Virus record (IMG/VR): IMGVR_UViG_3300036853_000446
Span: 1-64,000 of that record
Length of the DNA stretch: 64,000 nt
Strand: one strand, 5' to 3'
How positions within the stretch are numbered: position 1 is the stretch's first letter; the number at the start of each line of letters is the position of its first letter. The notes below the pieces were generated by a model, which was not told the origin of the DNA, searched no databases, and saw nothing but the letters and a program-made list of their open reading frames with translations. Positions 38,435 to 62,932 of the stretch are shown one piece after another. Made by a program: the position numbers and the translations under genes.

Positions 38435-38463
38435 AATTTATCTCCATGTTTTCATCTGAGCGC

Positions 38464-38496
38464 CGAGGGCAGCTCGGCCGGAGCCGAGTGCCCTCG
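38464..38496 (-). promoter_or_regulatory. Stable RNA hairpin (8 bp + 6 bp, one bulge) with a C(UCCG)G tetraloop on the mRNA strand
   Basis: Arms CGAGGGCA/TGCCCTCG and CTCGGC/GCCGAG; no U-tract follows. Confidence 0.75.
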
Positions 38497-38500
38497 AACC

Positions 38501-38526
38501 GTCTTCATCTATTGTCTTCGTCTATT
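38501..38526. repeat. Tandem 13-nt direct repeat AATAGAYGAAGAC (minus-strand reading)
   Basis: Plus strand GTCTTCATCTATT GTCTTCGTCTATT. Confidence 0.85.
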
Positions 38527-38541
38527 GGGCGACGCGAGCAA

Positions 38542-39285
38542 CTACCCGTTGAAGCCGGCGAGACCTTGTGAGGCATTCGCCGAGTTGCCGGCAAAACGGA
38601 TCGAAGTTCCCGCACCCGCTGCACCGCCATGTTCAGTCAACGGCGCGAGGCCCGAATCGATGTATTCACCATACGTAGAGAACCCGTCGATCACGTCCGT
38701 CGCCACGACGGTGCTCCCCTCTGCGACAATTGCTGCATCCGCCGTGTATGAAGCATTATAGGACTGCATCCAGCACCCCTCGTAGATTGTGATGAGCGCC
38801 TTCACGGCGTTTGTTGTAAACTCCCCGGGGCCTCGCACCACCGATGCAGCCCTCACGCCGGGTGCATTATCGACGTCACCAATCTGGTTGGAAGAAACCA
38901 ACTCGGAGAACACGAGTTCTTGCTTGATGTCGAAGGGCCACCGGTGGTGCCGTAACGACCTCACGAGCCCCTCGACGCCGCCCTTGTAACCAAAGACTTG
39001 GAAGAGGTTCACCGCGTAGAGCAGCGTCTTATTGACGGTGATATTGATCGGCTCCGTGACGCCAGGAACCATCTCCGCGATCTGATCCCCGTAGCCCACC
39101 CCTCGGACCGGATCAATTTGACGGCTTTCATCATGCCCAAATTCGGTGAGCACACCAATCTGTTGGAACTTCCGGGCCCCCGCCATATAGGAGAAGACCT
39201 TGTTCTTCTGAGAGACAGCCGCGCGAGTATTCGGCGCTGTCCCCTGGCGGTACAAATAGTTAGACGTGTCCGATGGTTTTCCCAT
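38542..39285 (-). CDS. Tail tube protein, 247 aa
   Basis: QQIGVLTEFGHDESRQIDPVRGVGYGDQIAEMVPGVTEPINITVNKTLLY...YEGCWMQSYNASY resembles myophage tube proteins; TAAGGA SD; position upstream of chaperones and tape measure. Confidence 0.75.
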   Translation of the reverse strand: MGKPSDTSNYLYRQGTAPNTRAAVSQKNKVFSYMAGARKFQQIGVLTEFGHDESRQIDPVRGVGYGDQIAEMVPGVTEPINITVNKTLLYAVNLFQVFGYKGGVEGLVRSLRHHRWPFDIKQELVFSELVSSNQIGDVDNAPGVRAASVVRGPGEFTTNAVKALITIYEGCWMQSYNASYTADAAIVAEGSTVVATDVIDGFSTYGEYIDSGLAPLTEHGGAAGAGTSIRFAGNSANASQGLAGFNG

Positions 39286-39335
39286 GATGTGTTCCTTACA
39301 TATTCAAGGTCACCCACACAGGGCGACTTGACTCT

Positions 39336-39428
39336 TTAGCGTTGGACAATCTGCAAGCGAGGCACGACATTATCGACTGTATGGGTGCCACTCTTCGACA
39401 GAACCAGGCAATCTTCGCAGACCTTCAT
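39336..39428 (-). CDS. Possible 30-aa mini-ORF with CxxC (MKVCEDCLVLSK...)
   Basis: ATG 8 nt after the upstream stop; fills the spacer; no other support. Confidence 0.25.
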   Translation of the reverse strand: MKVCEDCLVLSKSGTHTVDNVVPRLQIVQR

Positions 39429-39436
39429 GTGGCGCC

Positions 39437-40288
39437 TTATACCGACGACCGGTGAAACAAGCCGTGGAGTCTGTCGTTGCGTGCCGCGAGCTTCGCGAGA
39501 TCGTCCCGCACCCAGCCCTCCGTGAGTTCGGTCTGGCTGCAGATGCTCGCGACCTTTGTCGTGACCCGGGCGATGTCAGCTCGAGCCCGCGCCGCGTCGA
39601 ACTTTTTGCCCGTGGACGCGAGGCGGTTGATCGTGGCGACCGTTTGCTGCGCCTTGGTGAGAATGCCCCGCGCAACCTTCATGTTCGACTCGTACGAGTC
39701 GAACGCGAGCGCGGCGCTCTTCGGGTTGATGAAGTCCTCGTCTAGGAAACTCGCTCCGCCCCACGCGAGCGTTTCGTTTCTAAAGTTGATCAGGTGTTTG
39801 AGGAAGCCATCGATGTCCCGTAGATCGAGACCCTGCCCGACGGAAGGAGATGGTCTCCGCATCGCCTTGGCGAGGTTGCCCAACGTTGCCTGCAACGAAT
39901 CACACAACCTCCCTGCACTCATCGTCAAAGCATTGAGGTTATGGACCTCCCGACTGTCTTCTCTGGCTTCGACTCGTTTGGGGTCCATGCAGATCGTTCT
40001 CCCCTGATCGGAGGGCATAAAAGGACCCGCGGCCCATCGAGCGCGAATCGGGGCGAGAAGCGACCAGAGACGGTCGTCGTCGACCGCCATCAAGACCTCC
40101 CCCGTCTTCAGAAATTCATCGAGCGCGCGCCGCGCCGTCTTCGAATTGCGGCTCAGACGCGAGACGAGCGTGAGAACACTGACGGGACCGAGCGCGAATT
40201 TCTGCCCCTCGGGCGTACGGACCCAGTCCTTCGATCCGTCTGTGCCGAACGTGACGAGCAGAGATGGCATGCCTCCTGGAGGCAGCAC
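39437..40288 (-). CDS. Hypothetical protein, 283 aa (alternative ATG at 40270)
   Basis: Long ORF on the coding strand; helical C-terminus; no family recognised. Confidence 0.7.
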   Translation of the reverse strand: MLPPGGMPSLLVTFGTDGSKDWVRTPEGQKFALGPVSVLTLVSRLSRNSKTARRALDEFLKTGEVLMAVDDDRLWSLLAPIRARWAAGPFMPSDQGRTICMDPKRVEAREDSREVHNLNALTMSAGRLCDSLQATLGNLAKAMRRPSPSVGQGLDLRDIDGFLKHLINFRNETLAWGGASFLDEDFINPKSAALAFDSYESNMKVARGILTKAQQTVATINRLASTGKKFDAARARADIARVTTKVASICSQTELTEGWVRDDLAKLAARNDRLHGLFHRSSV

Positions 40289-40315
40289 GCAAAAGGATTC
40301 GCGACGCGCCCAGGC

Positions 40316-40347
40316 ACAAAAGACGAACGGCCCTGTGTGGGGGCCGT
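40316..40347 (-). terminator. Rho-independent terminator after the antitoxin-like gene
   Basis: Minus strand ACGGCCC-CCACACA-GGGCCGT followed by TCGTCTTTTGTG. Confidence 0.7.
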
Positions 40348-40442
40348 CACTACTTCGGAGATTTCCCGGAGGACCTGACTACGGGCTACGACGCTTTCTT
40401 TGCGATCTCCCGCTGCATTTGGGAAAGCGGCGTGATCGGCAA

Positions 40443-40853
40443 TCAAGCCGCTACGGTCAGCGTCAGTCCCGAGGGCACCACTGCCTCCAGAGTACCGGTG
40501 GAACGAAACCGATCGAGCAGGTGTAAGACGGCTAGGCGTACTACGGCTGAGATTTCGCCGTCTGCCGTTTCCCAGCGGCAAACCGTCTCGAGCGCAACGC
40601 CCAAAAGCGCACCGAGATCGCCCTGTGATAGGCCGAGTGCCTTACGGGCAAACCGAAGTTCGAGACCGCCGACGCCCTCAGACCGAGATAGCACGACTGC
40701 CGCGGCTTGAAGCTCGAGCCGCTCCCATTCATCAGACGTGAGCCCTGACGCCGCCCCCGTGGGAAGGTCGAGAGGTACCGCCTCGTAGGGTGCTTTCACC
40801 TCGTAGTGCCCGACCCGAATAACCGCTTCTCCCCGATCGATTGACTGACTCAT
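40443..40853 (-). CDS. MqsA/HigA-like XRE-HTH antitoxin, 136 aa
   Basis: C-terminal HTH LRFARKALGLSQGDLGALLGVALETVCRWETAD; N-terminal domain lacks CxxC; GAGGT SD 10 nt upstream of ATG 40853 (track start TTG 40859). Confidence 0.75.
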   Translation of the reverse strand: MSQSIDRGEAVIRVGHYEVKAPYEAVPLDLPTGAASGLTSDEWERLELQAAAVVLSRSEGVGGLELRFARKALGLSQGDLGALLGVALETVCRWETADGEISAVVRLAVLHLLDRFRSTGTLEAVVPSGLTLTVAA

Positions 40854-40865
40854 TTGCAAAACACC

Positions 40866-41147
40866 TCAAAAGACCGTGACGACAATCAGCCCACTCGTCA
40901 CCACGACGGCGAGCCCGACCTCTACGCCCTCTGCGTCCACACCGCCTGTGGCGAGCCACGTGCCCTCGTCCTCCTGAAAGACTACGGTCCCAACGCCCGA
41001 GAGCGCGTGGCGAATGTCCCGACGAGTCAGGTTCCGTTCCAAAGCACGATCGAAAGCGTGATCCCTCATGAGGAAGATGCCCGTCTGCCCCGCCCGATGG
41101 CACTCGGCCAGGATGAGACCTGGACTGTGGGTGGGGACGAATCGCAC
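40866..41147 (-). CDS. DUF4258-like (RelE/BrnT-fold) toxin candidate, 93 aa
   Basis: RDHAFDRALERNLTRRDIRHAL...LIVVTVF matches the DUF4258 pattern H-A-x-x-R-x-x-E-R-x-I...V-V-T-V-[FY]; upstream of an HTH gene. Confidence 0.7.
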   Translation of the reverse strand: MRFVPTHSPGLILAECHRAGQTGIFLMRDHAFDRALERNLTRRDIRHALSGVGTVVFQEDEGTWLATGGVDAEGVEVGLAVVVTSGLIVVTVF

Positions 41148-41148
41148 T

Positions 41149-41181
41149 CAATATATTGCCAAAGTTTGATGAATTGTCAAA
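41149..41181 (-). promoter_or_regulatory. Sigma70-type promoter with overlapping operator-like palindromes
   Basis: Perfect -35 TTGACA (41180-41175); -10 either TG-g-CAATAT (16-nt spacer) or TATATT (19 nt); palindrome CAATATATTG 41149-41158; inverted repeat TTTGA-N7-TCAAA 41165-41181. Confidence 0.7.
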
Positions 41182-41312
41182 TAACCAGCGACGACCCACT
41201 GAACGGAAGAGGGCCCAACCGCCCCGCTGTAAAGCGACGTAGGGGGATAAGCGACGTTCGTCGGGCGTCGATCTTCTTAGAACCGGCTTTCGGGCCGCCC
41301 ACACAGATTGAG

Positions 41313-42134
41313 CTAAACCCGCAAGAACGTCTGGATCACGTCTTCTCTCGAGACGGCAGTTCCGGTCTCGGGACCCGCGAGGAGGAAACGATTCAGCTTC
41401 CAGCCCCCTGGGTGCCCCAGAGACGCTTCGGCGGCGTTCAAGTGGACCTCCGCCGCCTGGAGATCAAAACGCACGTAAGGGCTCTTTCTGAACGCCAGAA
41501 CCATCTCCCGACCGCTCTCGAGTCGGTGAAAAACCACTCCGCGGAGGTGCCCCTGTCGGTACAGCTCGATGACCGCGTCAACGAGACGCCCCGTCCCGGT
41601 CGCGAGCACGAAGCCGTTGGTCCCTCGATCGATAATTGTCGGGGGCTCGGCCGGGCGCGGGAGCGCGGGAAGCGTCCCGTGCAGCACGTAGCCCCGCAAC
41701 CACTCGACCACTTGCCCTAGCCGCCGGCCCTGCTCCTCCCGATTCATCGGCGCCGCGCAGAAATAGCCGTCAACCAGCAGGAACAAGCGCGCGAGGTCCC
41801 GATCGACGTGCGCCAGGCCACCCTCTTGAAGCTGGGTGGCAAGTTCGACCGCCGACACCAGCGCCGCAGCCATGGGATGAAGGCACAGCTCCCTGTCGAG
41901 AAACAAGCTCGCGGCAACGACCGTTGCGAGGTTCTGGGCCGAGCGAGCGACGAACGTCAACGGCAACGAGCGCCCACAGATCAGGTCGACGTAGAGCCGC
42001 GACAGCGGGGACCCCGGGCCACCGGGCGCGTAGACGGTGAGCCCAGCGCATGATCCCGTGAACGAGCCGAACGCTACGACTGGCTCGTTCAGCAGTTCAG
42101 GGAGGTCGGGGTCGACGGTGACGCGGAGGTCCAC
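41313..42134 (-). CDS. Hypothetical protein, 273 aa (possibly a degenerate DHH/DHHA1-like fold)
   Basis: ORF is clear; C-terminal DL...LNAAE...GGW...LAGPETGTAVSREDV loosely resembles DHH-associated domains, but no DHH triad is present. Confidence 0.55.
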   Translation of the reverse strand: MDLRVTVDPDLPELLNEPVVAFGSFTGSCAGLTVYAPGGPGSPLSRLYVDLICGRSLPLTFVARSAQNLATVVAASLFLDRELCLHPMAAALVSAVELATQLQEGGLAHVDRDLARLFLLVDGYFCAAPMNREEQGRRLGQVVEWLRGYVLHGTLPALPRPAEPPTIIDRGTNGFVLATGTGRLVDAVIELYRQGHLRGVVFHRLESGREMVLAFRKSPYVRFDLQAAEVHLNAAEASLGHPGGWKLNRFLLAGPETGTAVSREDVIQTFLRV

Positions 42135-42150
42135 GCCGATAGGTTACACC

Positions 42151-46442: not shown

Positions 46443-46456
46443 ACAAGTCAACAATA

Positions 46457-49400
46457 TCAAAGCTTTGATCTGAGGTTGAAAGTGCAGACGATATATAGAA
46501 GCGGATATATAGGCATAAAAAATGCCTCGATCCTGAGTATCGTCGGATCGTCCGGATCCACGATCGCTGAGATACCGGTGAAGGCCCCGACGATCTCCGC
46601 TTGGACGAGCGAATTGAACATCGCGGTCAAGCTGATCTCCACGTCATTGGTGCGGCTCGCGAGGAACTTCGTGCCGATGTAGACGTCGAGAGTCGAACGC
46701 GCCGATTGCTGCACGAGGTCCGCGATCTGAGTCACGGTCGGGAGGCGACTCAAGATCGTACTCATGTCCGTCGTGAGCCCGTGTCGAATCCGCATTACGG
46801 GGGCGAGGTCCTCGAGCAGCGTCACACCGCTCGTCGCTGTCAGATTGGCCTCGACGGCGTCCAGGATGCGCGGCAGCCGCGTGAAGCCCTGGATGCGTCG
46901 CCGGGTGAACGGCGTCGCCACGTCGAACGCGGGGCTCACCGCAGACCCCGCCACGGCGGCAGCGAGGAACGTCCCGTCAACGAGCGTCTCGAAATTGTTC
47001 CCGAGTTCGTCCGTGAGAGTCACCACGGCCGAATCCGGGTAGATGGCGATGACGCGGTTTGACTCGATGCTGCGAGCCACGGTCTGGGCCGTCGTCGGTC
47101 CCGTCCCCGATGCGAACCCAATATAGGCCATCCGTTCCGACTGGTTGCGGATGGTCGACATGACTTCGACGTGCTGGAGCGTCGCCGAATAGATGGCCGT
47201 GCTGGTCGAGAGCGGCACGATGACGTCGGGCTTGACGTTGCCAGGCAACGGCTTTTCGAGGTCCTTGAGGGCCGTGAGAAAGGCGCGATCCGAGCCCTGG
47301 TTACTGCTCGCGGCCTTGAGGACCTGCTTGATGCCCACGAGAACGGCCCCGTTGAGGATCATGAGGAACGCGGCCAGCGTGACGCGATTCTCGCCGCTCA
47401 AAACGCCGAAATTCGCTTCGATCGTCTTGAACTGCGCGAAGAGGCGCGTCCCGAAATCCTGCTTCATGTAGTGGTAGGTAATGAAATAACTGTCGCCGAC
47501 CGCCGGCTCGAGTCCGCCCGGGTTGAATGTCTGGATGCTGGCGGTGTCGTTCAGGCCGACCCCGACCGTGTCTGTGACGATCAACTCGAGACCCGGCACG
47601 CTGAGGTACGCGATCGACGGACTCACTTTCCACGTCTGGGAAACGTCGAGCGTGAACGCTCCCGTGTCCGTGTAGGTGCCCACGGCGCTCGGGAGAACCG
47701 TGAAGCAGAGCCCTGTGCGGGCGTCCGTATAGGTCTGACCCGGGAAGCCCGTACCGGCGGACCCCGCGGGATTCGTCGAGGTGACGATGAAATCGTCCTT
47801 TGCCGCCTCCCCGTTGTCTCCGTCGCCCGGGGTAATCCCGATCCCCGTGGTCACGTTGAACGCCGAATTGCTGCCGTCGGCGAGCACGACGGTCGACCCT
47901 ACCCCCGTGTGGAGCGATTCGATCGTGATGAACTCGCGGTCGTCGATCTCATGAACCCAAGCGAAGGCTTCTGTCGTGAAGGCCGCAGGGTTCGACGTGT
48001 TCATGAGGATGTCGACGATCTCTTGCGCCGTGACGCGCGTTTCAGACACCTGAGAGCCCGTCGAAAAACCCAGCCTCGTGTTGGCCGAGCCCGCCTTGAT
48101 GAGCAAACGGCTATTCGAACCCGTAGTGGGGCTCGTCAGCCGTATGTGGTTCAGGTTTGATAGGGTGCCGACGGAGGCAAGACCCCCGACGACCGCGTTG
48201 ATGTCGGTCACGATCTGAGCCGCGGTCCTGCCGATACCAGCCGTCAGCGGAATGACGTACTCGACGCCGTCGACCTGCAGATTCAGCTGGTCGTTGACGC
48301 TCGCCGTAATGTCGATCGGCTCCGCCAAGCTGCCCACCAGAGTCGCGGGCTTGTTCGTGGCCGACGCCGTGCCCGAGGCCGACTGGAACGCTTTGAATCC
48401 GAGAACGGCTTCAACGGTGCCTGGACGAACCGAGACGACCGCGCCGTGGTCGAAACCGCCCGGCAACGCTTCGGGCGTCGTGACGGATTTGACGATGAAC
48501 ACGGCATGGCTCGAGCCGATCGAGACCGTCGATGCCAGGGTGGTCGCCCCGAAAACGGTATCGAACACGGCGTCCATTTCCGCCACGATCTCGGACGGGG
48601 TGCGCTCGCCCGGCGTCAGCGGGATGCTCACCTCTCCGTTGCCGCCCGTCATGCCGTGGACGATGAATCCAGAGTTGACGACCGTATCCGTGACGGCTTC
48701 GTTGCTGCCCTCTGCATCGGACGAGTCATTGATCAGAGGGACGAGGGCGCCCACCGGAGCCGACGCCGTGATGAGTAGCCCGTCCCCGACCCCATTGATG
48801 GCCGCCTCGATGGAGGCTGCGACAACGGCCTCCGAATCGCCACCCGTGAACGTGACCGTCACGTGCCCGGAACCAACGCCGGCTCCGCTGTCGAATTCGA
48901 AGACGGTGGGATCGTTGACCCCGTCGTCCAACGTGAAGGTCTCGCCCTCGATGAGCGACGCGCCGCCCACCGCCGTGATCGAGCCTTTGGAGGCGGATAC
49001 CGCGTCGCCAATGGTCAGCTCGAGGACGTTGCCCGGGGCGTCCGGGATCGTAATGTTGCCGCCCGAGAGTGCGACCTTTCTACTCACGAGATAGGCGGGC
49101 GAAGCCGTGCCCAGGTTGGCCACGAAGGCCGTCCCGTTGACCGTCACCCGGAACTGATCGGAGCTTCCCGAGTAGAGATCGTAGGGAGCTTGACCGTCGT
49201 TGGTGAATCGAGCGTTCGTGGTGGTCGTCGACCCAAAGGTCACCGTCACCGTCTCGTTGACGGGCGATCCGGCGCCCGTATGGAAGGCGTCTGGCACCTG
49301 CTCGGCGCCGCGCGGCCACTGGACGACTTCGGGCAGCCCCGCCTTGTTACCGAACCGCACCTGGAAGAGGTTCGTGCCCAATACCGAGCTGCGGACCTCG

Positions 49401-51058
49401 TACTCGCCGGACCCGAGGGCGCCTGACACCTTGTTCGTGAGCGTGCAGACGTCGTCCGTGATCCGGCTGTAGTTGTAGGTTGCGAAGACCGTCTGGTCCG
49501 GCGGCACGACCTCACGCACCTTGAACCGGAGCGTGGTCGAGTCGACCTCCACAACCGTCAGAGCCGAACGGCTGAGAGCGTCGTTGACGTTGCGCCCCGC
49601 CCAAGCCTGGACCAGGTCCGGGCGGTTGCTCGGGAGCGAAATGCGGCTATTGGAAACCGCCGCGTACAGCGTCTGCCCGAGAGGCGTATCCCGGCCATTG
49701 CCCGTTGTCGGGACTTGGGTCAGCACGAACTCGCTGTCGGCGATGAGCGCCGGCACGACGCCCGTATCCACATAGCGCTCGGTCGGAGCCATGAAAATCT
49801 TCTCGTCGACGAGCGTCGAGAGGATCTGAGTCGAGTTGAGGACGGTCGTGCCCGCGGTGTGGCCCGTATTTGCCACGCTGACCGACGTGCCCCAATGGAT
49901 GACCGAGACGTCGGCGCTCGGATTCTCGACGACGAAATCCTGTCCCTGAATGAAATCGCTACGTCCAGAGGCAAACCCGCACCGGACGACGTCCGTGACC
50001 AGAGTGTTGGGTAGGTAGTCGAAGGTGTCTTGCCACGTGTTGGCAAAATACTGGACGCTCACCGTTGCGCCCTGTGGCGGCGGTAGCGCGAGGGTCACGG
50101 TGCCGTTCGTGCCGTCAACGGCGATCGGGACCTTCTGCACGCCGTTGACGAGGACCGTCACCTTGGTCGTGTCGTTCGTCGTGATGCCGCCGTCAGAGCC
50201 ATCCACGATCGGGCGCTGGAAGACTCGGAAACTCTTGGCTCGGCTCGTCTTCTTGCCTTGGGTAAAACCGAAGACGCCGTTGGCTGAGCCGTTACCGATC
50301 TCGACTTCGGAGGCCGCGATCAAAGTCAGGTGGTCGAGCCCGCGGTTGTCGGTAAAGACGAGCGTGGCAAGGCCGGAAATGAGATTCGAATCGATCTCGA
50401 CCTTGAGCGCCGCCGCCGTGTAGGTCGCCGCGGCGAGCGAAAAGATGCGCTCCGTGCCGTCGATGATGACCGAAAGAATCGACGCGCTCGACGAGATCAC
50501 GAACGGCGCCGCCGCTGGCGACGTCAATTCCGCCCGAGTCGCCGTCACCTGGTCGGAGACCGTGTCGGTGAAGGCCGTGTCCGTCCGTCGGAAAAAATAC
50601 GTGACCCGGATGTCGTCGCCAGCCTGCGGAGGCACCTGCAGCGTGACGTAGCCGCCCACCCCCTGCACTGCCCCGACCGCTACCTGCAGGCCGTTGATGG
50701 AGACGCTGACCGCGCGCACGTCGTTCACGACGCGGCCGTAGCCATTGCCGTCGACAATGGGGAAATTCCGAACCCGGAGCTTCGTCACCAGGCCATTCGC
50801 GGCGCCCAAGGTGGGGTTGTTCGGATTCCTCTCAGCGAGGACAAATCGAACCGAAGCATTCTCGCTCAGGATCTGCTGGTCGAGATTCGCGCTCGAGCCA
50901 CGGATGTTCTCGAGGTTGGACTGGATGAGCTGCTCCTGTCCGACGCCAAGGATCACGGGGATGCGCAATCCCGCGACGAGATTTGCAGCGTTTGCCTCCG
51001 TCAGTGTGCGCGTGTACACGCCGGGAGGAACGTACGTCACCATCGGTCCGATAGCCAT
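46457..51058 (-). CDS. Contractile tail sheath protein, 1533 aa, with multiple inserted domains
   Basis: N-terminal YVPPGVYTR; C-terminal sheath core KPDVIVPL, QSERMAYIG, RVIAIYPD, TRRRIQGF, GVTLLE, IRHGLTTD, TVTQIADLV, EAFFMPIYPLLYI; strong AGGAG SD. Confidence 0.9.
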   Translation of the reverse strand: MAIGPMVTYVPPGVYTRTLTEANAANLVAGLRIPVILGVGQEQLIQSNLENIRGSSANLDQQILSENASVRFVLAERNPNNPTLGAANGLVTKLRVRNFPIVDGNGYGRVVNDVRAVSVSINGLQVAVGAVQGVGGYVTLQVPPQAGDDIRVTYFFRRTDTAFTDTVSDQVTATRAELTSPAAAPFVISSSASILSVIIDGTERIFSLAAATYTAAALKVEIDSNLISGLATLVFTDNRGLDHLTLIAASEVEIGNGSANGVFGFTQGKKTSRAKSFRVFQRPIVDGSDGGITTNDTTKVTVLVNGVQKVPIAVDGTNGTVTLALPPPQGATVSVQYFANTWQDTFDYLPNTLVTDVVRCGFASGRSDFIQGQDFVVENPSADVSVIHWGTSVSVANTGHTAGTTVLNSTQILSTLVDEKIFMAPTERYVDTGVVPALIADSEFVLTQVPTTGNGRDTPLGQTLYAAVSNSRISLPSNRPDLVQAWAGRNVNDALSRSALTVVEVDSTTLRFKVREVVPPDQTVFATYNYSRITDDVCTLTNKVSGALGSGEYEVRSSVLGTNLFQVRFGNKAGLPEVVQWPRGAEQVPDAFHTGAGSPVNETVTVTFGSTTTTNARFTNDGQAPYDLYSGSSDQFRVTVNGTAFVANLGTASPAYLVSRKVALSGGNITIPDAPGNVLELTIGDAVSASKGSITAVGGASLIEGETFTLDDGVNDPTVFEFDSGAGVGSGHVTVTFTGGDSEAVVAASIEAAINGVGDGLLITASAPVGALVPLINDSSDAEGSNEAVTDTVVNSGFIVHGMTGGNGEVSIPLTPGERTPSEIVAEMDAVFDTVFGATTLASTVSIGSSHAVFIVKSVTTPEALPGGFDHGAVVSVRPGTVEAVLGFKAFQSASGTASATNKPATLVGSLAEPIDITASVNDQLNLQVDGVEYVIPLTAGIGRTAAQIVTDINAVVGGLASVGTLSNLNHIRLTSPTTGSNSRLLIKAGSANTRLGFSTGSQVSETRVTAQEIVDILMNTSNPAAFTTEAFAWVHEIDDREFITIESLHTGVGSTVVLADGSNSAFNVTTGIGITPGDGDNGEAAKDDFIVTSTNPAGSAGTGFPGQTYTDARTGLCFTVLPSAVGTYTDTGAFTLDVSQTWKVSPSIAYLSVPGLELIVTDTVGVGLNDTASIQTFNPGGLEPAVGDSYFITYHYMKQDFGTRLFAQFKTIEANFGVLSGENRVTLAAFLMILNGAVLVGIKQVLKAASSNQGSDRAFLTALKDLEKPLPGNVKPDVIVPLSTSTAIYSATLQHVEVMSTIRNQSERMAYIGFASGTGPTTAQTVARSIESNRVIAIYPDSAVVTLTDELGNNFETLVDGTFLAAAVAGSAVSPAFDVATPFTRRRIQGFTRLPRILDAVEANLTATSGVTLLEDLAPVMRIRHGLTTDMSTILSRLPTVTQIADLVQQSARSTLDVYIGTKFLASRTNDVEISLTAMFNSLVQAEIVGAFTGISAIVDPDDPTILRIEAFFMPIYPLLYIVCTFNLRSKL

Positions 51059-51094
51059 AACTACTTGTATCTCCTAGGTTTTTTGTTGCTCTAA

Positions 51095-51155
51095 CATCTG
51101 TGTCTCATCTGGGTGTTGCATCTGGATCTGGGTATGGGTGGGATTCGCCGGTCTG
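51095..51155 (-). repeat. Cluster of CAGA(T/C) motifs in the sheath 5' leader
   Basis: Minus strand GCAGACC...CCCAGATCCAGATG...CCCAGATGAGACACAGATG. Confidence 0.7.
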
Positions 51156-51162
51156 CTAATTC

Positions 51163-51633
51163 TCAGCCGCGGAAAAGAAGGTGTTGGAGAACGATCTTGG
51201 CGGCCATATCGGTAGTGAAGGCCCCAATCTTGAAAACCTTCTCCTCCTGGACTTTCCCGTTCACGGTATCGAGGTCCAGGTCGAACCTCACCTCGAAGTG
51301 TCCGGTGTGAATGATGGTTGCATAGCCATCGATCGGCATATCGCTCATGTCTTCGCCCGTGAGCGTCAAGAATATTGCAGAACCGCCCGACGAATCACTG
51401 ACTTTGGCCTGACAATGGCCCTGCTCAGAGGTTATCTGCTTTGCCACCTCACGAAGAAAGTCGCGGTCGGCTTCCTTCAAGTAATCGTTGTAAGACTTGC
51501 CCCCCGCGATGCGCGCTTTGAGTGTTTGCAGCTCTGACGCCATGCGTGAACGAGACGGGCGCGCGCTCTGAGAGTATGTAAGGAGGCGGCGCAGCTCTCG
51601 TTCAACTTCGTTAGCTTTGACAATCTTGCGCAT
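51163..51633 (-). CDS. Hypothetical protein, 156 aa
   Basis: ATG 51633 (MRKIVKANEVE) preferred to track TTG 51696. Confidence 0.65.
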   Translation of the reverse strand: MRKIVKANEVERELRRLLTYSQSARPSRSRMASELQTLKARIAGGKSYNDYLKEADRDFLREVAKQITSEQGHCQAKVSDSSGGSAIFLTLTGEDMSDMPIDGYATIIHTGHFEVRFDLDLDTVNGKVQEEKVFKIGAFTTDMAAKIVLQHLLFRG

Positions 51634-53734: not shown

Positions 53735-54772
53735 TCAGCGGCTCGCGTGCTCATCCTGGGCGAGCACCAGCAATCCTTCGGCAACGGCCGTAAGCGGGTT
53801 CGGGGCTTGCCGAACCTCGCTGATCTGGATCGGAAACTTCTTACGAACCCGATCAAATTCCTCTTCGAAGATTTCCATGAACCCGCCCGCCTTGCTGGTC
53901 CCCCCGCTCACGATGAAGGGGATCGGCTCAGGCAAATCGACATTGTTGGCGACCCTCTTGAACTCGCTCGTAATGGCCTTGAAGCAATAATCGATGACGT
54001 TTCGGTAATACATGGCGAGCGCCTGCTGCTCTCGACCCTCGGGATTCTTTAGATCGATTCCACGCTCCTTGATGGCGCACATTTGCGAGGCCGTCTTGCC
54101 GATGGCTCGCCCCGCCTGCTGATCGATCCAATCACCGCCGGCCCTCGAAAGGGCGAATTCCATCCCAGAACTAGCCTGATACGCGAGCGCGATGTTGACC
54201 ATACCAGAACCAAAGCTCACGGCGAGGCCGCTGAATTTCTCCTGAGCGCATTGCGAAAAGATGATGGCCATACCCTCGTTCGTCGGTTGGCCCGAGTATC
54301 CGTGCTCGTCGAGAATCTTCCTGAAGACCTCGGTGTGATAAACGATGTCTTGGCCCGGGTTGTCGATCGGCTCTGCCGGCACGCTGTAGAAGCAGAACTC
54401 CCGGGAAACGCGCGGCACGCCAACTACTCTCTTGATCAACTGGCTGATAATCCACTGCGCGTCCAATTCGCCCGCGGAAATGACCCCTCGACTCAGAGGG
54501 CGCCGCACCTCCCGCTTGAAGAGGTTCGCCATCGTCAAGGCGCCCTCGCCAATGACGATGATATCGTCCGAGCCCTCCTTCTTGATGTAATCCACGTTGC
54601 TCATCCGGAGCGATCGTTTGGCGTCCGCCTCCAGATCCAGGAAGGCATCTCGGATCGAGATGGTCACAGTCTTCGCCTCCGATTTGCGTGCCGAAACAAG
54701 GTTGCCAGTGCCGATGTCTAACCCAACACCCAGGGGTTCTCGTATATCGTCGTTCTTCATCTTCATTTCCAT
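53735..54772 (-). CDS. Actin-fold ATPase (MreB/MamK/ParM-like), 341-345 aa
   Basis: Phosphate-1 GLDIGTGNLV; RPLSRGVI; YSVPA; connect-1 NEGMAII; phosphate-2 VSFGSGMVNIA; AGGDWID; adenosine IVSGGTSKAGG; connect-2 PLTAVAEG. Confidence 0.85.
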   Translation of the reverse strand: MEMKMKNDDIREPLGVGLDIGTGNLVSARKSEAKTVTISIRDAFLDLEADAKRSLRMSNVDYIKKEGSDDIIVIGEGALTMANLFKREVRRPLSRGVISAGELDAQWIISQLIKRVVGVPRVSREFCFYSVPAEPIDNPGQDIVYHTEVFRKILDEHGYSGQPTNEGMAIIFSQCAQEKFSGLAVSFGSGMVNIALAYQASSGMEFALSRAGGDWIDQQAGRAIGKTASQMCAIKERGIDLKNPEGREQQALAMYYRNVIDYCFKAITSEFKRVANNVDLPEPIPFIVSGGTSKAGGFMEIFEEEFDRVRKKFPIQISEVRQAPNPLTAVAEGLLVLAQDEHASR

Positions 54773-54794
54773 CTTGAGTCATACGGCGTTCAAA

Positions 54795-55490: not shown

Positions 55491-55513
55491 GCCCCGGGCG
55501 GTCCATCAAAACA

Positions 55514-56691: not shown

Positions 56692-56695
56692 AGGC

Positions 56696-58048: not shown

Positions 58049-58087
58049 GGCTCATGGAGCTGCGTCACAAATGGAATCGTCTCGTTG

Positions 58088-58399: not shown

Positions 58400-58553
58400 T
58401 GTCCCTGGGCTTTACACCGCGCCGCCGGGATCGTTGAAAGCGTAGCCCCGAACGTGAACGACTAGGCTCTAGCCAAGCTCGCGCAGCTTGGCGATCACAC
58501 GGTCACGCCCCATGCATCTGCCGCAGGAGAACGACACGTCGAACGTTATGGCG

Positions 58554-59798
58554 TCATCCCACCAGCTTACACCAATTTGCCACACAGCTGACGATGGCAG
58601 CAGGGTCCCGTACAAATTCTGATTCCCAGATCACTAGACACTCAATTCCAACCTCCAAAAATGCGTCGATGACCTCTTGCTCGTGCTCCCAGATATCTTT
58701 CCCTGTAAATGCCTCCGAATGCCAGTAGTCGCCGAAGACTTCCACTACCTTCCTAATACCCCGATTGGCTAGCACGACTTCTGGCCCCGGCAGAACGAAG
58801 TCAGGGTTCTTGTGACATTTCAGCTTAGGAAGCCATACCCAATAGCTTCCATCACCGGTATATAGAAGCTGCGTCAAACACTCGGCGAAACGACGTTCCA
58901 GCCCGTTTGGACCCGGACGCCTGAAGTCCTTCCAAGCCGCTCGTGCCACCTCTGCATTTTGCATGGCATATGGGACACCGTATCGCGCAATCGAAGTCTT
59001 CTTAGCCTTATCATGAATGACTGGATTCTGCAGCGGGTGAGTCACCCCGTAACGCACCAAACACGTCTGCTCTCGACGTTGCTGCACCTGCAGGTTTTGA
59101 AGGGGACTACAAACGCCATATACCTTCAAACAGGTCGTGCGCATCTTGTCGACAATTTCAGCAGAAGCTGACGGCGCGGGACCGCCAAATCGTAAGATGC
59201 ACGTTGCCCTTCTCTTACTAATAGCACCCGGGATTGCACCCGTAGCTTCCACTCCGTACCTAAGTAAGCACGTTCCTCTCAGCCGGACACGGATCTCTTC
59301 CGATTGCAACGGGCTCGACACACCGTAGTTGATTTTTAGCGTGGCTACCTGACGTGCCTTTGTCTCCGATACTCGCATCGGATTTGCATCTCCTTTAGGG
59401 AATCTTCCTCGTTTCGGAGCGCGCTTCCTTTCAATGCTCTCGTACAATGGTGACTCCTTACAGAAGACATTTTCAACGCCATACTTCGTTTTTAGAGTCA
59501 ACTTACGCCGCTCTTCCAATCCCGGAATTTTTCGAAAAGATTCAGTGCCGTACCGCTCTAAGAGCGTTGCTTTCTGCCGAACACTCTGGACATCCCTACT
59601 GCGCGATAGCCATACCGAGCAACACTTGTGATGGCTCGCCATCCGACTTTCGTTAATAGCCGCGAACCCACACAGGCAATCCCTTGGGGTCAAATCCCCG
59701 AGAACAAGCTTCCAACCGCTACAGACGGCTTTGTGGCGTGAGTTTATACTGTCGGAGTTTGGGAAGTGCTTTCGACAGTGTGGACAGGTAACCGGCAT
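58554..59798 (-). mobile_element. Free-standing homing-endonuclease-like gene (Zn fingers + KxTxLxRYG repeats + Vsr/DUF559-like PD-(D/E)xK nuclease), 414 aa
   Basis: N-terminal CPHC/CLCG; about 7 repeats such as KATLLERYG, KLTLKTKYG, RGTCLLRYG, EQTCLVRYG; C-terminal NPDFVL...VVEVFGDYWH...IWESE; GC about 47% in a counted 60-nt sample, well below the flanks. Confidence 0.8.
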
Positions 59799-59815
59799 TT
59801 ATTGAGATACACCGG

Positions 59816-60700
59816 TCATCCCATGAACTTCTGTGGTGTGAGGACACCTCGGCCGCTATAGGGTCCAAAGGAACTACGGATCCCAATTCCGAAGCGGGGC
59901 TGTTGTAAACCCTTGATTACACGGACAGTTTGTTTGGCTTTCTCGAGTTGGCCTTCGAAGAGATCTTTGAAATTGTTGGCGGCGGCCTCGTACTTGCTCG
60001 ACTTGTCCAGATTGAGACTCACGCCACCAATCGAATAATCGAACTCTTCGGAAATCCAGTTGATCATGAGAGCAAGCAGCGCGTAGTTTGCAGCGCCCGT
60101 CAGCAGCAGCGTTCGCCACTCGGGCTTCCATTGACTCATGACGCTCATGTTCTGAAACGGCGTCCGAGGTGGCGATGCGATGACCGCGTCGAGCGCACGC
60201 TCCAGGAACTCTTTCAGCTCGACATCCTCCCAGATGTAGCCGAACACGCGGTTGAACTGGCTGACGGTCTCCTCGTGCGCAGGAGGCCTAAACCTATAAT
60301 TTCTATCAGGATTTGAATCTCTGAGCATGATCCTGAGTCGACGCACGAGGTCAGCCTCGCAATCGTTCATGTTCAAGCTCATGACCGTCTTGTCGATGAC
60401 CTCGAACTCCTGGATGGCCTGATGGACGGGCCCGCCAACGGTCTCGCGGAACGTCCAGCGAGCCCGATAGACCCCGATGTTGGCGTCGAGCGGGATGATG
60501 ATGCTCGCGTAATACTTGCCAACCTCCGGGCTCGCCGGTGAGCGCCGCGGCGCGCCCAAGAGAACCTCCCGCCCCGTCGTGAAGTCGTAGAGGGTGTAGT
60601 AGACCTCGGCCGCATTCGAGGGCGTCCCCGAACTGTTTTCCAAGAAGATGTTGAGGTCCTCTGGACCTAGCTGCTGACCTTTAAAGAATGCGACAGACAT
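59816..60700 (-). CDS. Putative head-tail adaptor (neck) protein, 294 aa
   Basis: LVRRLRIMLRD...WEDVELKEFL...LLLTGA...FDYSIGGVSLNL pattern resembles gp15/gp6-type adaptors. Confidence 0.55.
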   Translation of the reverse strand: MSVAFFKGQQLGPEDLNIFLENSSGTPSNAAEVYYTLYDFTTGREVLLGAPRRSPASPEVGKYYASIIIPLDANIGVYRARWTFRETVGGPVHQAIQEFEVIDKTVMSLNMNDCEADLVRRLRIMLRDSNPDRNYRFRPPAHEETVSQFNRVFGYIWEDVELKEFLERALDAVIASPPRTPFQNMSVMSQWKPEWRTLLLTGAANYALLALMINWISEEFDYSIGGVSLNLDKSSKYEAAANNFKDLFEGQLEKAKQTVRVIKGLQQPRFGIGIRSSFGPYSGRGVLTPQKFMG

Positions 60701-60703
60701 GAT

Positions 60704-60976
60704 TCAACGCTCGCTCCGCCAGCCCTTGCCTTCGAGGCGGTCCTTCGCTGCGGCGCAAAACGCGCCGGGGTCATCGATATTACCGGTCATCTGCTCAATG
60801 CAGCGCGTGACCTCGTGTTCGCCGCCTCCGCTCAGATTGTCCCAGAATTTCTTCAGGCTCTTCTCGGTCCATCCCTTCGGGAGCGATTTCCAGCGGTCCG
60901 CGGTGCGCGAGACCTCTCGGCGCGCGAGATAACGACCGAGGTAGCGGCTGACGACTCTTCGTGAGGTGTCGTCCAC
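60704..60976 (-). CDS. Small hypothetical protein, 90 aa
   Basis: GTG start 3 nt after the upstream stop; RVVSRYL motif; Cys pair TRCI...AFCA. Confidence 0.65.
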   Translation of the reverse strand: MDDTSRRVVSRYLGRYLARREVSRTADRWKSLPKGWTEKSLKKFWDNLSGGGEHEVTRCIEQMTGNIDDPGAFCAAAKDRLEGKGWRSER

Positions 60977-60979
60977 GTC

Positions 60980-61729
60980 TCAGCTCCACCCGAACTTGAT
61001 TTTGCGATCGAGAAGGTCCCGTGGGTCACCGACCGCGGCAGCGTCGAGGACCTGAAACCGCATCTCCGTCACCTCCGGTATCGACTGCGAGGTGCGCTGA
61101 ACGCTCCACTCGATGAACCACTGCCCCGACTGTCCCGTTTCCCCGGCGCGCCCCGTGGCGTAGAATTCGCCAACCTCGCCCGCCACCGGCAGGCGGTGAC
61201 GAGGCCCGACATATTTCCGCGATCCATCGCTTCTGATCTGCGCGAGGCTGTACGTGACGCGAAAAGGGACCATCGGCCTGTGACGGTCGCTGAGGAATAC
61301 CGGCAGGTCCCCTCGCTGCAGGGTCTGGAGCCAGCGGAAGGTCTTTGGACCCAACGTGATGGCGCGCAGCGGGGGCGGATGATGATCGATGACGGGGAGG
61401 ATCGAAAGATGGGAGTCCCCCTGGATGACGAGCGGCGCGTTGTAGAGAAAGAGGCTGGTTCCGACTACGACTCCTCTCGCCCCCACTCGGACATTGCCGT
61501 TGGCGGAAGCGTCCGAGGACCCCGCCACGACCGCTGAAGTGTCGACGAAATAGTTCCACTCGAACGTGCTGTCTCCCAGAAAGGTCCCGCTCGCTAGCTG
61601 TCCGACGCTCGCCACACCCGTAAAGGACGCGGTCCCCTGGAACGTGAGGGCGATGGCAATGCAGACAATCGCGGCCGCCGAGGCCGGGCTTGTCCCATTA
61701 ACCGTTGCGGAGCTATCGACGGTCGCCAA
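60980..61729 (-). CDS. Hypothetical virion protein, 249 aa
   Basis: C-terminal half (DLPVFL...VTYSL...VGEFYA...WFIEW) resembles the N-terminal half of the 294-aa adaptor gene (DLNIFL...VYYTL...VGKYYA...YRARW). Confidence 0.6.
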   Translation of the reverse strand: MATVDSSATVNGTSPASAAAIVCIAIALTFQGTASFTGVASVGQLASGTFLGDSTFEWNYFVDTSAVVAGSSDASANGNVRVGARGVVVGTSLFLYNAPLVIQGDSHLSILPVIDHHPPPLRAITLGPKTFRWLQTLQRGDLPVFLSDRHRPMVPFRVTYSLAQIRSDGSRKYVGPRHRLPVAGEVGEFYATGRAGETGQSGQWFIEWSVQRTSQSIPEVTEMRFQVLDAAAVGDPRDLLDRKIKFGWS

Positions 61730-61744
61730 GATTCCGCTTTCAGA

Positions 61745-62128
61745 TCAGGATTCGGACAAAATGAGCTGATTTGCGGGCACTCGAAGCTGGTCGCCTATCG
61801 CGATCGTGCGCGGCGCGGACAGGGCCGTGTGGTAGAGGAGATTCCCCGACGCGGGCGCGTCAAAGATTCCGAAATGAACGACGGTGCCCCAGGAAGCCGT
61901 AGCCATCGGGAACAGGACGTCTCCAACGTTTGCCACTTGATTCGCCGCGGGAGATCCGAGCGTCAGGGTCTGCCTCGTATACGCTCCGCCCGAGACTTCG
62001 GCGCCACCGCCAGCGTTCGTAGGCGCCGTCGTATACGCAGCGAGGTAAACTGCTGCCGGGGCGGCGAACGAAGTAGCTCTCAACACGTGGTTGAGTAGAT
62101 TGACCGCTAGGTAGTCGGACTTTGCCAT
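61745..62128 (-). CDS. Conserved small phage virion/fibre-associated protein, 127 aa
   Basis: SDYLAVNLLNHVL...VYLAAYTTAP...EVSGGAYTRQ...FPMATASWGTVVHFGIFDA..SGNLL is a widespread phage structural pattern. Confidence 0.75.
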   Translation of the reverse strand: MAKSDYLAVNLLNHVLRATSFAAPAAVYLAAYTTAPTNAGGGAEVSGGAYTRQTLTLGSPAANQVANVGDVLFPMATASWGTVVHFGIFDAPASGNLLYHTALSAPRTIAIGDQLRVPANQLILSES

Positions 62129-62183
62129 GATGCCTCAACATCAGGCGGTTGATAAAAGCTGTCTCAGCCTTCATCGAACGGGA

Positions 62184-62570
62184 TCAGCGGTTGTTGAACG
62201 ACGCAGTCAATCCTCCCGATGTCTGAATGGGCTCCGACACGTCGTAATCTTGAGCCACAATCTGCTGACCGGCCGCGTACGTGAGACGGACTCTCCAAAA
62301 GCCCGCGGCATTGGGCCGAAATCGAAGGCTGTAACTACCTGGCGCTCCGGGGATTTCGTGGAAATAGAGACTGCCTGCGTTCACTTGGCTGTCAGAGACC
62401 GGAGCCCCGTTCATGACGGGCCAAGGCTGCGGCACGTTGTTGCAAAACGTGTGTGACGTCAGGTCGACGAGCGTCAGCCCTTTAATGGGCGTGAACCCAT
62501 CGACCTCAAAGAAATCCGCCTGATCAATCACCGTCTGATTGATCCGACCGACGCGACCTACCGACGCCAA
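62184..62570 (-). CDS. Hypothetical beta-sandwich protein, 128 aa
   Basis: TTG start with AAAGGG SD-like; EIPGAPGSYSLRFRPNAAGFWRVRLTY is Ig-like. Confidence 0.6.
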   Translation of the reverse strand: MASVGRVGRINQTVIDQADFFEVDGFTPIKGLTLVDLTSHTFCNNVPQPWPVMNGAPVSDSQVNAGSLYFHEIPGAPGSYSLRFRPNAAGFWRVRLTYAAGQQIVAQDYDVSEPIQTSGGLTASFNNR

Positions 62571-62601
62571 ACGCTAACCCTTTCTCGCATGTGGTTCTTG
62601 C

Positions 62602-62850
62602 TCAAGGCATGTGGCAGAGGTGCTTCAGATTCTTGACCGTGTTGGCATAGAGAAGCGCGGGCACCTTGCCCGTTTGGTTGAACCACGCGGTCCGCAGCTC
62701 CCCAATGTTCACGACCGTGCAATCGAAGACGAAGCTGATTCTCGTGCCATTCTTCGACGTGTTCTGCATCGGCGCCCCCGCGACCTGCAGGTAGGCAGCA
62801 AAATACAGATCCGTGGTTTCGAATACGCTATCTCTTGTCTCGTCATTCAT
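62602..62850 (-). CDS. DUF5659-like small protein, 82 aa
   Basis: FETTDLYFAAYLQVAG...ISFVFD pattern. Confidence 0.6.
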   Translation of the reverse strand: MNDETRDSVFETTDLYFAAYLQVAGAPMQNTSKNGTRISFVFDCTVVNIGELRTAWFNQTGKVPALLYANTVKNLKHLCHMP

Positions 62851-62902
62851 ATGGGGTCTCGTCTTCAGAGGACTTCATCTTCGGTCTGGGGCTGATTTTT
62901 CA

Positions 62903-62932
62903 GGGTCTGGGTCTGGGTCTGAATCTGGATCT
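62903..62932 (-). repeat. Five tandem AGAYYC hexamers
   Basis: Minus strand AGATCC AGATTC AGACCC AGACCC AGACCC. Confidence 0.9.

What the first reader, a model, noticed from the sequence alone, without database searches (positions are those of the whole stretch)
38452..62932. Recurrent AGAY-repeat motif in the leaders of several genes
Seen on the mRNA strand in four spacers: 62870-62932 (five tandem AGAYYC plus AGACCG and AGATGAAG); the sheath leader 51095-51155 (CAGAT x4, sharing the exact 10-mer AGATCCAGAT with 62923-62932); the tube-chaperone spacer (AATAGAYGAAGAC x2 at 38501-38526 and CAGATGAAAAC near 38452); and the actin gene 5' end (AAGATG GAAATG AAGATG AAGAAC, 54752-54775). Inference: multi-site binding boxes for a phage RNA- or DNA-binding regulator (analogous to CsrA GGA boxes or TRAP repeats) coordinating late gene stoichiometry or antitermination. 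Nearby small proteins (82-aa DUF5659-like, FmdB-like) are candidates for the binder.
Basis: partly seen in the sequence, partly recalled or inferred. Interest (0 to 1): 0.6.

Follow-up and report, generated by a model that had tools for sequence, protein, structure and literature searches.

The report
AGAY-repeat leaders of jumbo-phage tail genes
Runs of a short AGAT-like motif spaced six bases apart lie just upstream of the same few tail and late genes in about a hundred related soil jumbo-phage contigs, so they are a real, conserved and undescribed control element whose binding partner is unknown.

Summary
All four sites are at the stated coordinates on the mRNA (minus) strand. The window is the first 64 kb of a 407-kb soil jumbo-phage contig.

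Within that genome, the sheath, DUF5659 and post-tube leaders are the top three of 299 leaders by AGAT count.

Comparative data are decisive:
- Sheath leaders of 23 relatives (53-75% protein identity): AGAT 59 seen, 10 expected.
- 50 DUF5659-gene leaders: AGAT 130 seen, 14 expected.
- 68 spacers after the tube-like gene: 42 hold three or more AGAT.

The reverse complement is not enriched. The commonest spacing between units is 6 nt. The units are predicted to be unpaired. One unit usually abuts the Shine-Dalgarno site or the start codon. The actin (volactin) 5' end is coding, but relatives partly support it as a fourth site.

No Rfam family matches. The most likely function is a single-stranded mRNA platform for a multimeric regulator of translation initiation of a small late-gene set. 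The binder is unknown. Nothing supports the DUF5659 or FmdB-like proteins as binder, and the phage's own CsrA gene does not track the motif. Rival readings are a factor-free ribosome-loading enhancer and DNA-level sites.

Verdict: new variant of a known kind, moderately interesting.

The parts
62903..62932 (-). Five tandem hexamer units (AGATCC, AGATTC, AGACCC x3): distal cluster of the DUF5659-gene leader
   Evidence: Top matrix cluster of the whole genome. Orthologous clusters in 51 of 66 relatives.
62856..62887 (-). Proximal units of the same leader (AGACCG, AGATGAAG, AGAC x2), running up to the start codon at 62850
   Evidence: Relatives carry AGATGAGGAT and AGATG at this position.
62939..62959 (-). 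GC-rich terminator-like hairpin after the upstream 374-aa gene, followed by GATTTTAG and then the first unit
   Evidence: The same order (stop, hairpin, first unit) is seen in relatives.
62602..62850 (-). 82-aa DUF5659-family gene served by the leader
   Evidence: Pfam PF18903 E 7e-5, 23.0 bits, just under the 23.6-bit cut-off; 62 homologues; Atlas DUF5659 clusters.
51096..51130 (-). Four CAGAT units (spacing 6, 13, 11) in the tail-sheath leader
   Evidence: All 23 relatives carry ARAY runs here (minimum 3 per leader).
51069..51074 (-). GGAGAT: Shine-Dalgarno site of the sheath gene that itself ends in an AGAT unit
   Evidence: GGAGAT or GAGGAT recurs at the ribosome site of the relatives' leaders.
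46457..51058 (-). Tail sheath gene (1533 aa)
   Evidence: tblastn to annotated sheaths of Tunturiibacter phage Tunturi_5 and Bacillus phage G. Pfam gave only weak DUF hits.
38501..38526 (-). Two AATAGAYGAAGAC 13-mers (four AGAY units) in the spacer after the tube-like gene
   Evidence: Orthologous spacers in 68 relatives average 3.25 AGAT in the first 150 nt; 42 of 68 hold three or more.
38464..38496 (-). Strong hairpin between the distal and proximal units of that leader
   Evidence: MFE -40.5 kcal/mol for the leader, z -3.07.
38440..38458 (-). Proximal units CAGATGAAAAC and GGAGAT (ribosome site) before the ATG at 38434
37316..38434 (-). 372-aa gene of unknown function served by that leader
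   Evidence: Orthologues at 29-38% identity in the same position in five relatives. No Pfam, PHROG or phage-record match.
38542..39285 (-). Conserved 247-aa virion structural protein (tube-like position) upstream of that spacer
   Evidence: 63-68% identity in relatives; 42% identity to Tunturi_5 'virion structural protein'.
54752..54775 (-). AGATGG, AAATGA, AGATGA, AGAACG: four in-phase units across the start codon of the volactin-family gene (coding); a possible fourth member
   Evidence: The orthologue's start region is the top matrix cluster of relative G003. Unit runs plus AGATGAGGATC precede the gene in L195, L196 and L201, but not in L192-L194.
53735..54772 (-). Actin-like gene, volactin family
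   Evidence: Pfam PF25216 E 3.6e-69.

Best explanation
The AGAY runs are a conserved cis-regulatory element of a clade of soil jumbo phages. Units of A-R-A-Y (mostly AGAU, often preceded by CC) sit at a 6-nt period, 3 to 7 per cluster. They lie on the mRNA strand of the 5' leaders of a small fixed gene set: the tail sheath, the gene after the tube-like gene, the DUF5659 gene and probably the volactin-family actin.

I infer that they act in the RNA. They would form a single-stranded, multi-site platform between hairpins, bound cooperatively by an oligomeric trans-acting factor (phage- or host-encoded, not identified). The last unit overlaps the Shine-Dalgarno site or the start codon, so binding would set translation initiation of these late genes together.

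Shown: the motif, its period, its strand bias, its positions and its conservation. Inferred: that it is transcribed, that a protein binds it, and that the output is translational.
For: Conservation at orthologous leaders while the surrounding sequence has diverged:
- Sheath leaders of 23 relatives: AGAT 59 against 10.3 expected (in 21 of 23 leaders), CAGAT 39 against 3.7, CCAGAT 21 against 1.2.
- 50 DUF5659 leaders: AGAT 130 against 13.8, in 44 of 50. The matrix maximum of a 2.6-kb locus falls in the 300 nt before the gene in 51 of 66 loci, against 11.5% expected.
- 68 spacers after the tube-like gene: about 1.0-1.3 AGAT per 50 nt over 150 nt, against 0.1-0.3 in most other bins (up to 0.66); 42 of 68 hold three or more.

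The same orthologous leaders top genome-wide rankings in three genomes (G000, G001, G003).

Other features:
- Strand bias: the reverse complements are far rarer (ATCT 20 against AGAT 130; CAGAT complement 0 against 39).
- Period: the commonest spacing of successive units is 6 nt (51 and 65 cases), then 5 and 11-12. Autocorrelation peaks at lags 6 and 12.
- Single-strandedness: unpaired probability is 0.62 in units against 0.42 elsewhere (p 4e-13), and 0.58 against 0.47 (p 0.003).
- Link to the ribosome site: ATGAGG occurs 31 times against 1.0 expected, in 30 of 50 leaders, as AGATGAGGA. Start codons often read AGATG. The window has GGAGAT.
- Fluid copy number among the closest relatives, 2-5 units, as expected of redundant sites.
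- No Rfam family matches.
Against: - No transcription start or expression data exist. No RNA run holds the phage, so it is not shown that the distal units are transcribed.
- No binder was found. The genome encodes no TRAP, Hfq, ProQ, KH, S1 or bS21.
- The one known RNA regulator it encodes, CsrA, is absent from relatives G001 and G003, which carry the motif, and the units lack GGA.
- Covariation of unit flavour between leaders of one phage is not significant (n = 11). Only the G002 lineage, with CCGAT units in all three leaders, hints at a shared factor.
- Direct repeats in one orientation also fit a DNA-binding protein.
Confidence: 0.45

Rival explanations
1. A factor-free translational enhancer or standby site. 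The C/A-rich, G-poor repeats keep the leader open or dock the 30S subunit. For example, GAUCC in AGAUCC units is complementary to GGAUC in the single-stranded 3' tail of 16S rRNA, just 5' of the anti-Shine-Dalgarno core (from my own knowledge of the E. coli-type 3' end). This would raise the output of a few highly expressed late genes.
For: - The window's sheath leader is unusually unstructured (MFE -3.7 kcal/mol, z +2.5; 199 of 200 shuffles fold at least as well).
- The units are preferentially unpaired.
- AGATCC and GATCC are enriched in sheath leaders.
- The G002 lineage keeps GATCC while losing the first A.
- The served genes are structural.
Against: - Across relatives the leaders are not less structured than shuffles (mean z -0.04 for sheath, -0.53 for DUF5659).
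- The best-kept part is AGAU, not GAUCC. AGATG (61) outnumbers AGATC (31) in DUF5659 leaders, and AAAU and AGAC units cannot pair with the tail.
- Only three or four genes carry it, not the late genes in general.
- The host's 16S sequence is unknown.
Confidence: 0.2
2. DNA-level element: direct-repeat sites for a late transcription factor, or promoter-proximal copies of a -10-like element. The first unit is often TAGATGTA, which resembles the genome's dominant promoter-like heptamer CGGTGTA in its GRTGTA core. Such copies could recruit or pause the polymerase, as -10-like sequences do downstream of lambda PR'.
For: - The first unit follows a terminator-like hairpin directly and is often TAGATGT(A/G) (GATGTA in 25 of 50 DUF5659 leaders).
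- CGGTGTA is strongly intergenic and in about 30 cases sits 16-18 nt before a start codon.
- A fixed orientation fits promoter-linked sites.
Against: - AGATGTA and TAGATGTA are not enriched genome-wide (15 and 2 copies in G000), so they are not a promoter class.
- A 6-bp period does not keep sites on one face of duplex DNA.
- Units overlapping the ribosome site and the start codon, and their placement in predicted single-stranded stretches between hairpins, have no meaning for duplex DNA.
Confidence: 0.2
3. No function: slippage-prone microsatellites, composition, or disguised coding sequence. One frame of the 62903-62932 repeat reads Asp-Pro repeats in frame with the upstream stop codon, and the sheath leader holds a 15-codon upstream ORF at 51121-51074.
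For: - The 62903-62932 run is a perfect tandem array.
- GAY codons give similar runs inside genes.
- The frame coincidences can be read directly.
Against: - The motif is conserved at three orthologous leaders over about 100 contigs at 50-75% protein identity, and is strand-specific.
- The unit phase shifts by 5- and 7-nt steps, which breaks any reading frame.
- The upstream ORF is already lost in the closest relative, L001.
- Simulated genomes almost never give such clusters.
Confidence: 0.04

Closest known systems
TRAP binding sites (9-11 GAG/UAG triplets with 2-3 nt spacers in the Bacillus trp leader and at the trpG and trpP ribosome sites)
   Same: Short core repeated at a 5-6 nt period on single-stranded RNA. 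Many copies, variable spacers, and sites that reach the ribosome-binding region. A small regulon of leaders.
   Different: The core is ARAY (AGAU), not (G/U)AG. There are 3-7 units per cluster rather than 9-11. No TrpBP-family gene is in the phage. No terminator/antiterminator pair was shown.
CsrA/RsmA GGA sites
   Same: Several short sites per leader with one overlapping the Shine-Dalgarno site (AGATGAGGAT contains GGA). The phage itself encodes a CsrA homologue.
   Different: The repeated units lack GGA and are not presented in hairpin loops. The phage CsrA gene is missing from relatives that have the motif.
Hfq distal-face (ARN)n motifs and HutP UAG repeats
   Same: Ring oligomers reading a periodic purine-rich motif in mRNA leaders.
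   Different: ARN triplets are contiguous (period 3) and HutP sites have period 7; here the period is 6. No Hfq gene is in the phage. HutP was not searched.
Lambda PR' promoter-proximal -10-like pause element (model for the DNA-level rival)
   Same: Promoter-like words repeated just downstream of a late promoter.
   Different: No promoter or start site is mapped here, and there are many copies extending to the start codon.

Membership tests
TRAP-regulated leader | Nine to eleven GAG/UAG triplets separated by 2-3 nt | tested here: not met
   The units are A-R-A-Y with 2-nt spacers, 3-7 per cluster.
TRAP-regulated leader | TRAP (TrpBP, PF02081) protein available | tested here: not met
   No match in the phage genome. 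The host is unknown, so host supply could not be tested.
CsrA/Rsm target | GGA core in each site, often in a hairpin loop, with one site over the Shine-Dalgarno site | tested here: not met
   GGA occurs only at the ribosome site (AGATGAGGAT, GGAGAT). The repeated units are AGAT, AGAC or AAAT and are predicted unpaired between hairpins, not in loops.
CsrA/Rsm target | Co-occurrence with a CsrA gene | tested here: not met
   Phage CsrA (PF02599, 68 bits) is present in G000 and G002. It is absent from G001 (94% complete) and G003 (100% complete), which carry the motif. Host CsrA could not be tested.
Hfq (ARN)n site | Three or more contiguous A-R-N triplets | tested here: not met
   Only every second triplet fits ARN, because the period is 6. 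No Hfq gene is in the phage.
Any Rfam cis-regulatory family | Covariance-model match | tested here: not met
   Permissive scan of 36000-64000: one chance-level hit elsewhere (E 0.54) and none in the leaders.
Intrinsic-terminator attenuator | Hairpin plus U-tract between the element and the gene, with an alternative pairing | tested here: inconclusive
   Second hairpins occur in many leaders, but AGATGAGGAT follows them, not a U-run. Some post-tube leaders can pair an AGAY-rich arm with a downstream TCTTCGTCGCCGTCT-like arm. This was not analysed further.
DUF5659 protein as the binder | Nucleic-acid-binding fold or basic surface | tested here: not met
   Model pLDDT 88, topology beta-alpha-beta-beta-alpha-alpha. 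Best Foldseek E 0.19 and best VIA-align Z 3.7, to unrelated alpha/beta domains. Acidic and basic residues roughly balance (sequence). Binding itself cannot be tested with these tools.

The most novel reading that the evidence does not exclude
The AGAU hexamer repeats are the operator of an undescribed oligomeric RNA-binding regulator. It could be phage-encoded, possibly one of the conserved proteins of unknown function next to the targets, or a host factor of Acidobacteriota-like soil bacteria. It would jointly gate translation of the tail sheath, a tail-assembly gene, the DUF5659 protein and a phage actin. That would be a TRAP- or CsrA-like post-transcriptional circuit for tail morphogenesis in jumbo phages.
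Probability: 0.3. Interest if true: 0.7.

Novelty: new variant of a known kind. Interest (0 to 1): 0.6.

Why it matters
Gene regulation in uncultivated jumbo phages is almost unknown. Here a short, easily recognised motif marks the same three or four late-gene leaders in about a hundred metagenomic contigs. That gives a defined, testable post-transcriptional (or late-transcriptional) regulon and a bait sequence for finding its factor. It also links tail genes with a phage actin and with a widespread domain of unknown function (DUF5659), which gives a first functional handle on both.

Tried and rejected
1. Genome-wide enrichment of single AGAY or CAGAT words in intergenic DNA: absent. Only clusters are special.
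2. Phage CsrA as binder: does not co-occur with the motif.
3. TRAP, Hfq, cold-shock domain, S1, bS21, ProQ and KH genes in the phage: none.
4. DUF5659 fold search: no informative match. The Atlas only confirms the family. No paper mentions DUF5659.
5. FmdB-like protein: below the Pfam cut-off, and it has a weak homologue beside the sheath gene of a phage whose sheath leader lacks the repeats.
6. 'Unstructured leader' as the conserved trait: rejected, since z-scores across relatives are about 0.
7. Covariation of unit flavour between leaders of one phage: not significant.
8. TAGATGTA as a general late promoter: not enriched.
9. Coding readings (Asp-Pro frame, 15-codon upstream ORF): phase shifts and loss in L001 argue against them.
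10. Expression evidence: no RNA run holds the phage. Laying the two DNA runs showed one identical source contig and no copy-number variant of the tandem array.
11. The search for related loci with the 372-aa protein found nothing. Its orthologues were reached through the genome search and through the tube-like gene instead.
12. Tunturi_5, the nearest isolate (35% sheath identity), lacks the repeats in its sheath leader.

Full report
**Context.** The window is the first 64 kb of a single 407,634-bp virus contig. Its ends overlap by about 140 nt, it carries 30 tRNA genes, and it is about 60% G+C. All genes between 36 and 64 kb lie on the minus strand. The only DNA runs that hold the contig are soil metagenomes. 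The 1533-aa protein at 46457-51058 is a tail sheath by tblastn: 35% identity to the annotated sheath of Tunturiibacter phage Tunturi_5, a 309-kb phage of an Acidobacteriota host, with a C-terminal match to the Bacillus phage G sheath. The 345-aa protein is a volactin-family actin (PF25216, E 3.6e-69). The 82-aa protein is DUF5659-like. The 247-aa 'tube' protein matches a Tunturi_5 virion structural protein.

**Observation.** The fourth site (54775-54752) is not a leader. It begins at the volactin start codon.

**Significance within the genome.** Clusters behave differently.
- Only three places in 407 kb hold four CAGAY with gaps of 15 nt or less: the two leaders and one coding tandem repeat. 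Simulated Markov-3 genomes give 0.017 such clusters each.
- I built a 6-column matrix (consensus C-C-A-R-A-Y) from 126 units in the sheath leaders of relatives only. It ranks 62883-62935 first in the genome, on either strand, at 47.0. The maxima of 60 simulated genomes averaged 32.4 and peaked at 39.6.
- The same matrix ranks the sheath leader second at 32.5. That value alone equals a typical null maximum.
- Ranking all 299 leaders by AGAT count puts the sheath, DUF5659 and 372-aa-gene leaders at ranks 1-3.

**Comparative evidence.**
- *Sheath.* The sheath protein retrieved 29 IMG/VR loci (53-75% identity), 23 non-redundant with an upstream region. Every one has runs of ARAY units 40-110 nt before the ATG. 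Unbiased k-mer counts against the rest of the same loci give AGAT 59 against 10.3 expected (21 of 23 leaders), CAGAT 39 against 3.7 with zero reverse complements, and CCAGAT 21 against 1.2.
- *DUF5659.* A DUF5659 alignment retrieved 80 loci, 66 non-redundant. The sheath-trained matrix peaks within the 300 nt before the gene in 51 of 66 loci, against 11.5% expected. In the 50 leaders of the 49-64% identity clade, AGAT occurs 130 times against 13.8 expected, in 44 leaders. Its complement occurs 20 times. Four closer relatives (70-83% identity) show the same layout with 2-5 units.
- *Post-tube gene.* The tube-like protein retrieved 80 loci, 68 non-redundant. AGAT density is 1.0-1.3 per 50 nt over the 150 nt after its stop codon, against 0.1-0.3 in most other bins (up to 0.66), and ATCT is about 0.15. 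Three or more AGAT occur in 42 of 68.
- *Whole genomes.* In the fully fetched relative G001 (452 kb), the two best matrix clusters are again the sheath and DUF5659 leaders. In G003 the post-tube leader ranks first by AGAT count. The other high-ranking leaders in these genomes are not orthologous to one another.
- *Volactin.* The G003 orthologue's start region is that genome's top cluster, and L195, L196 and L201 carry unit runs plus AGATGAGGATC before the gene. L192-L194 have none. This fourth member is only partly supported.
- *Limits of the clade.* Tunturi_5 and distant DUF5659 loci (47% identity or less) lack the repeats. Some of the latter still bracket the ribosome site with CAGAC.

**Anatomy.**
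- Successive units are most often 6 nt apart (51 and 65 cases), then 5 and 11-12. Autocorrelation peaks at lags 6 and 12.
- Leaders hold 4.6-6.2 units per 117-150 nt, against 1.4 expected per 117 nt.
- The typical order is: upstream stop codon; GC-rich hairpin; a first unit, often TAGATGT(A/G); a run of CCAGAT- or CCAAAT-type units; often a second hairpin; AGATGAGGAT (the ribosome site); then a start codon that often reads AGATG.
- The window shows this with the hairpin at 62959-62939 and with GGAGAT ribosome sites at 51074-51069 and 38445-38440.
- Units are predicted unpaired more often than the rest of the leader: 0.62 against 0.42 (p 4e-13) and 0.58 against 0.47 (p 0.003).

**Mechanism.** Five features point to function in the mRNA as a multi-site single-stranded platform that controls translation initiation: strand specificity, a period unsuited to duplex DNA, single-stranded display, overlap with the ribosome site and start codon, and restriction to a fixed small gene set. 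The working model is binding by an oligomeric factor, in the manner of TRAP, CsrA or Hfq. This step is inferred. There are no expression data and no binder.

Candidate binders tested:
- The phage encodes no TRAP, Hfq, cold-shock domain, S1, bS21, ProQ or KH protein.
- Its CsrA homologue is absent from G001 and G003, which carry the motif.
- The DUF5659 model is confident but matches no known nucleic-acid-binding fold.
- The FmdB-like protein is below the Pfam cut-off and has a weak homologue beside the sheath gene of Tunturi_5, whose sheath leader lacks the repeats.

One hint of a shared factor is that the G002 lineage uses CCGAT-type units in all three leaders. Across 11 phages, however, unit flavour does not covary significantly.

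**Rivals.**
- *Factor-free enhancer or standby site.* This fits the window's unusually open sheath leader (z +2.5) and the GAUCC complementarity to the 16S 3' tail. But leaders of relatives are not less structured than shuffles, and AGAU, not GAUCC, is the conserved core.
- *DNA-level reading.* This draws on the resemblance of the first unit to CGGTGTA, the genome's dominant promoter-like word. But AGATGTA is not enriched genome-wide.
- *Neutral slippage or hidden coding.* Conservation and phase shifts exclude these.

**Comparison and novelty.** The element works like TRAP, CsrA or Hfq target sites but meets the defining features of none, and no Rfam family matches. I rate it a new variant of a known kind: a periodic short-motif leader element with a new core, a new regulon and an unknown factor.

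Noticed in passing
Whole genome; in the window at 58419, 46307, 59814 and 54817 (minus strand): CGGTGTA is the strongest intergenic word (36 in co-directional spacers against 1.6 expected; 101 copies in all). In about 30 cases the start codon lies 16-18 nt after the start of the motif, with no Shine-Dalgarno site between. It looks like a promoter element driving leaderless mRNAs, mostly in the non-structural 120-380 kb part. It is equally abundant in relatives G001 (92) and G003 (86).
   Followed up: partly
Genome 215578-215724, minus strand (L174), outside the window: A phage-encoded CsrA homologue (PF02599, 68 bits, above the cut-off; the arginine matching E. coli CsrA R44 is kept). It is also present in G002 and absent from G001, G003, G004 and Tunturi_5.
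   Followed up: partly
Window 53735-54772, minus strand: A volactin-family actin (a Pfam family named after a Haloferax protein) encoded by a bacterial-type jumbo phage and conserved at about 60% identity in relatives. No paper in the library links volactin with phages.
   Followed up: partly
L211, L229, L233 (spacers after the tube-like gene): An AGAY-rich 5' arm (such as AGACGACGATGAAGA) can pair with a TCTTCGTCGCCGTCT-like arm about 60 nt downstream. This may be a long-range stem or a structural switch involving the units.
   Followed up: no
Genome 107820-107871, minus strand: Three GCGAGATCC direct repeats about 16 nt apart, immediately upstream of a CGGTGTA motif. This is a different, operator-like arrangement.
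   Followed up: no
Window 51074-51121, minus strand: A 15-codon upstream ORF in the sheath leader whose TAG overlaps the sheath ribosome site. It is not kept in the closest relative, L001.
   Followed up: partly
Window 40443-41147, minus strand: Adjacent small genes with weak Xre-type HTH and DUF4258 hits, resembling a toxin-antitoxin-like pair inside the tail-gene region.
   Followed up: no
Genome 65183-66025, minus strand (L168:3184-4026): A patatin-like phospholipase (PF01734, E 1.5e-27) among the structural genes. Also a Laminin_G_3 lectin-fold protein at 68564-69871 and a Gp80 fibre-like 'head protein' at window 61745-62128.
   Followed up: no
Sheath loci of relatives (L003, L004, L008, L012, L019 and others): A T-rich word (TTTCCTCTTGT-like) followed within about 10-20 nt by TAGG lies upstream of the repeats in many sheath leaders. 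It is a candidate late promoter. In the window a similar word precedes the small ORF 51163-51543, which sits between that word and the sheath leader and is not apparent in relatives where the word lies just upstream of the sheath leader.
   Followed up: no
Genome 140-165 kb and the contig ends: A cluster of 30 tRNA genes on one strand. A terminal overlap of about 140 nt indicates a circular or circularly permuted genome of about 407.5 kb, although IMG/VR classes the record as linear.
   Followed up: no
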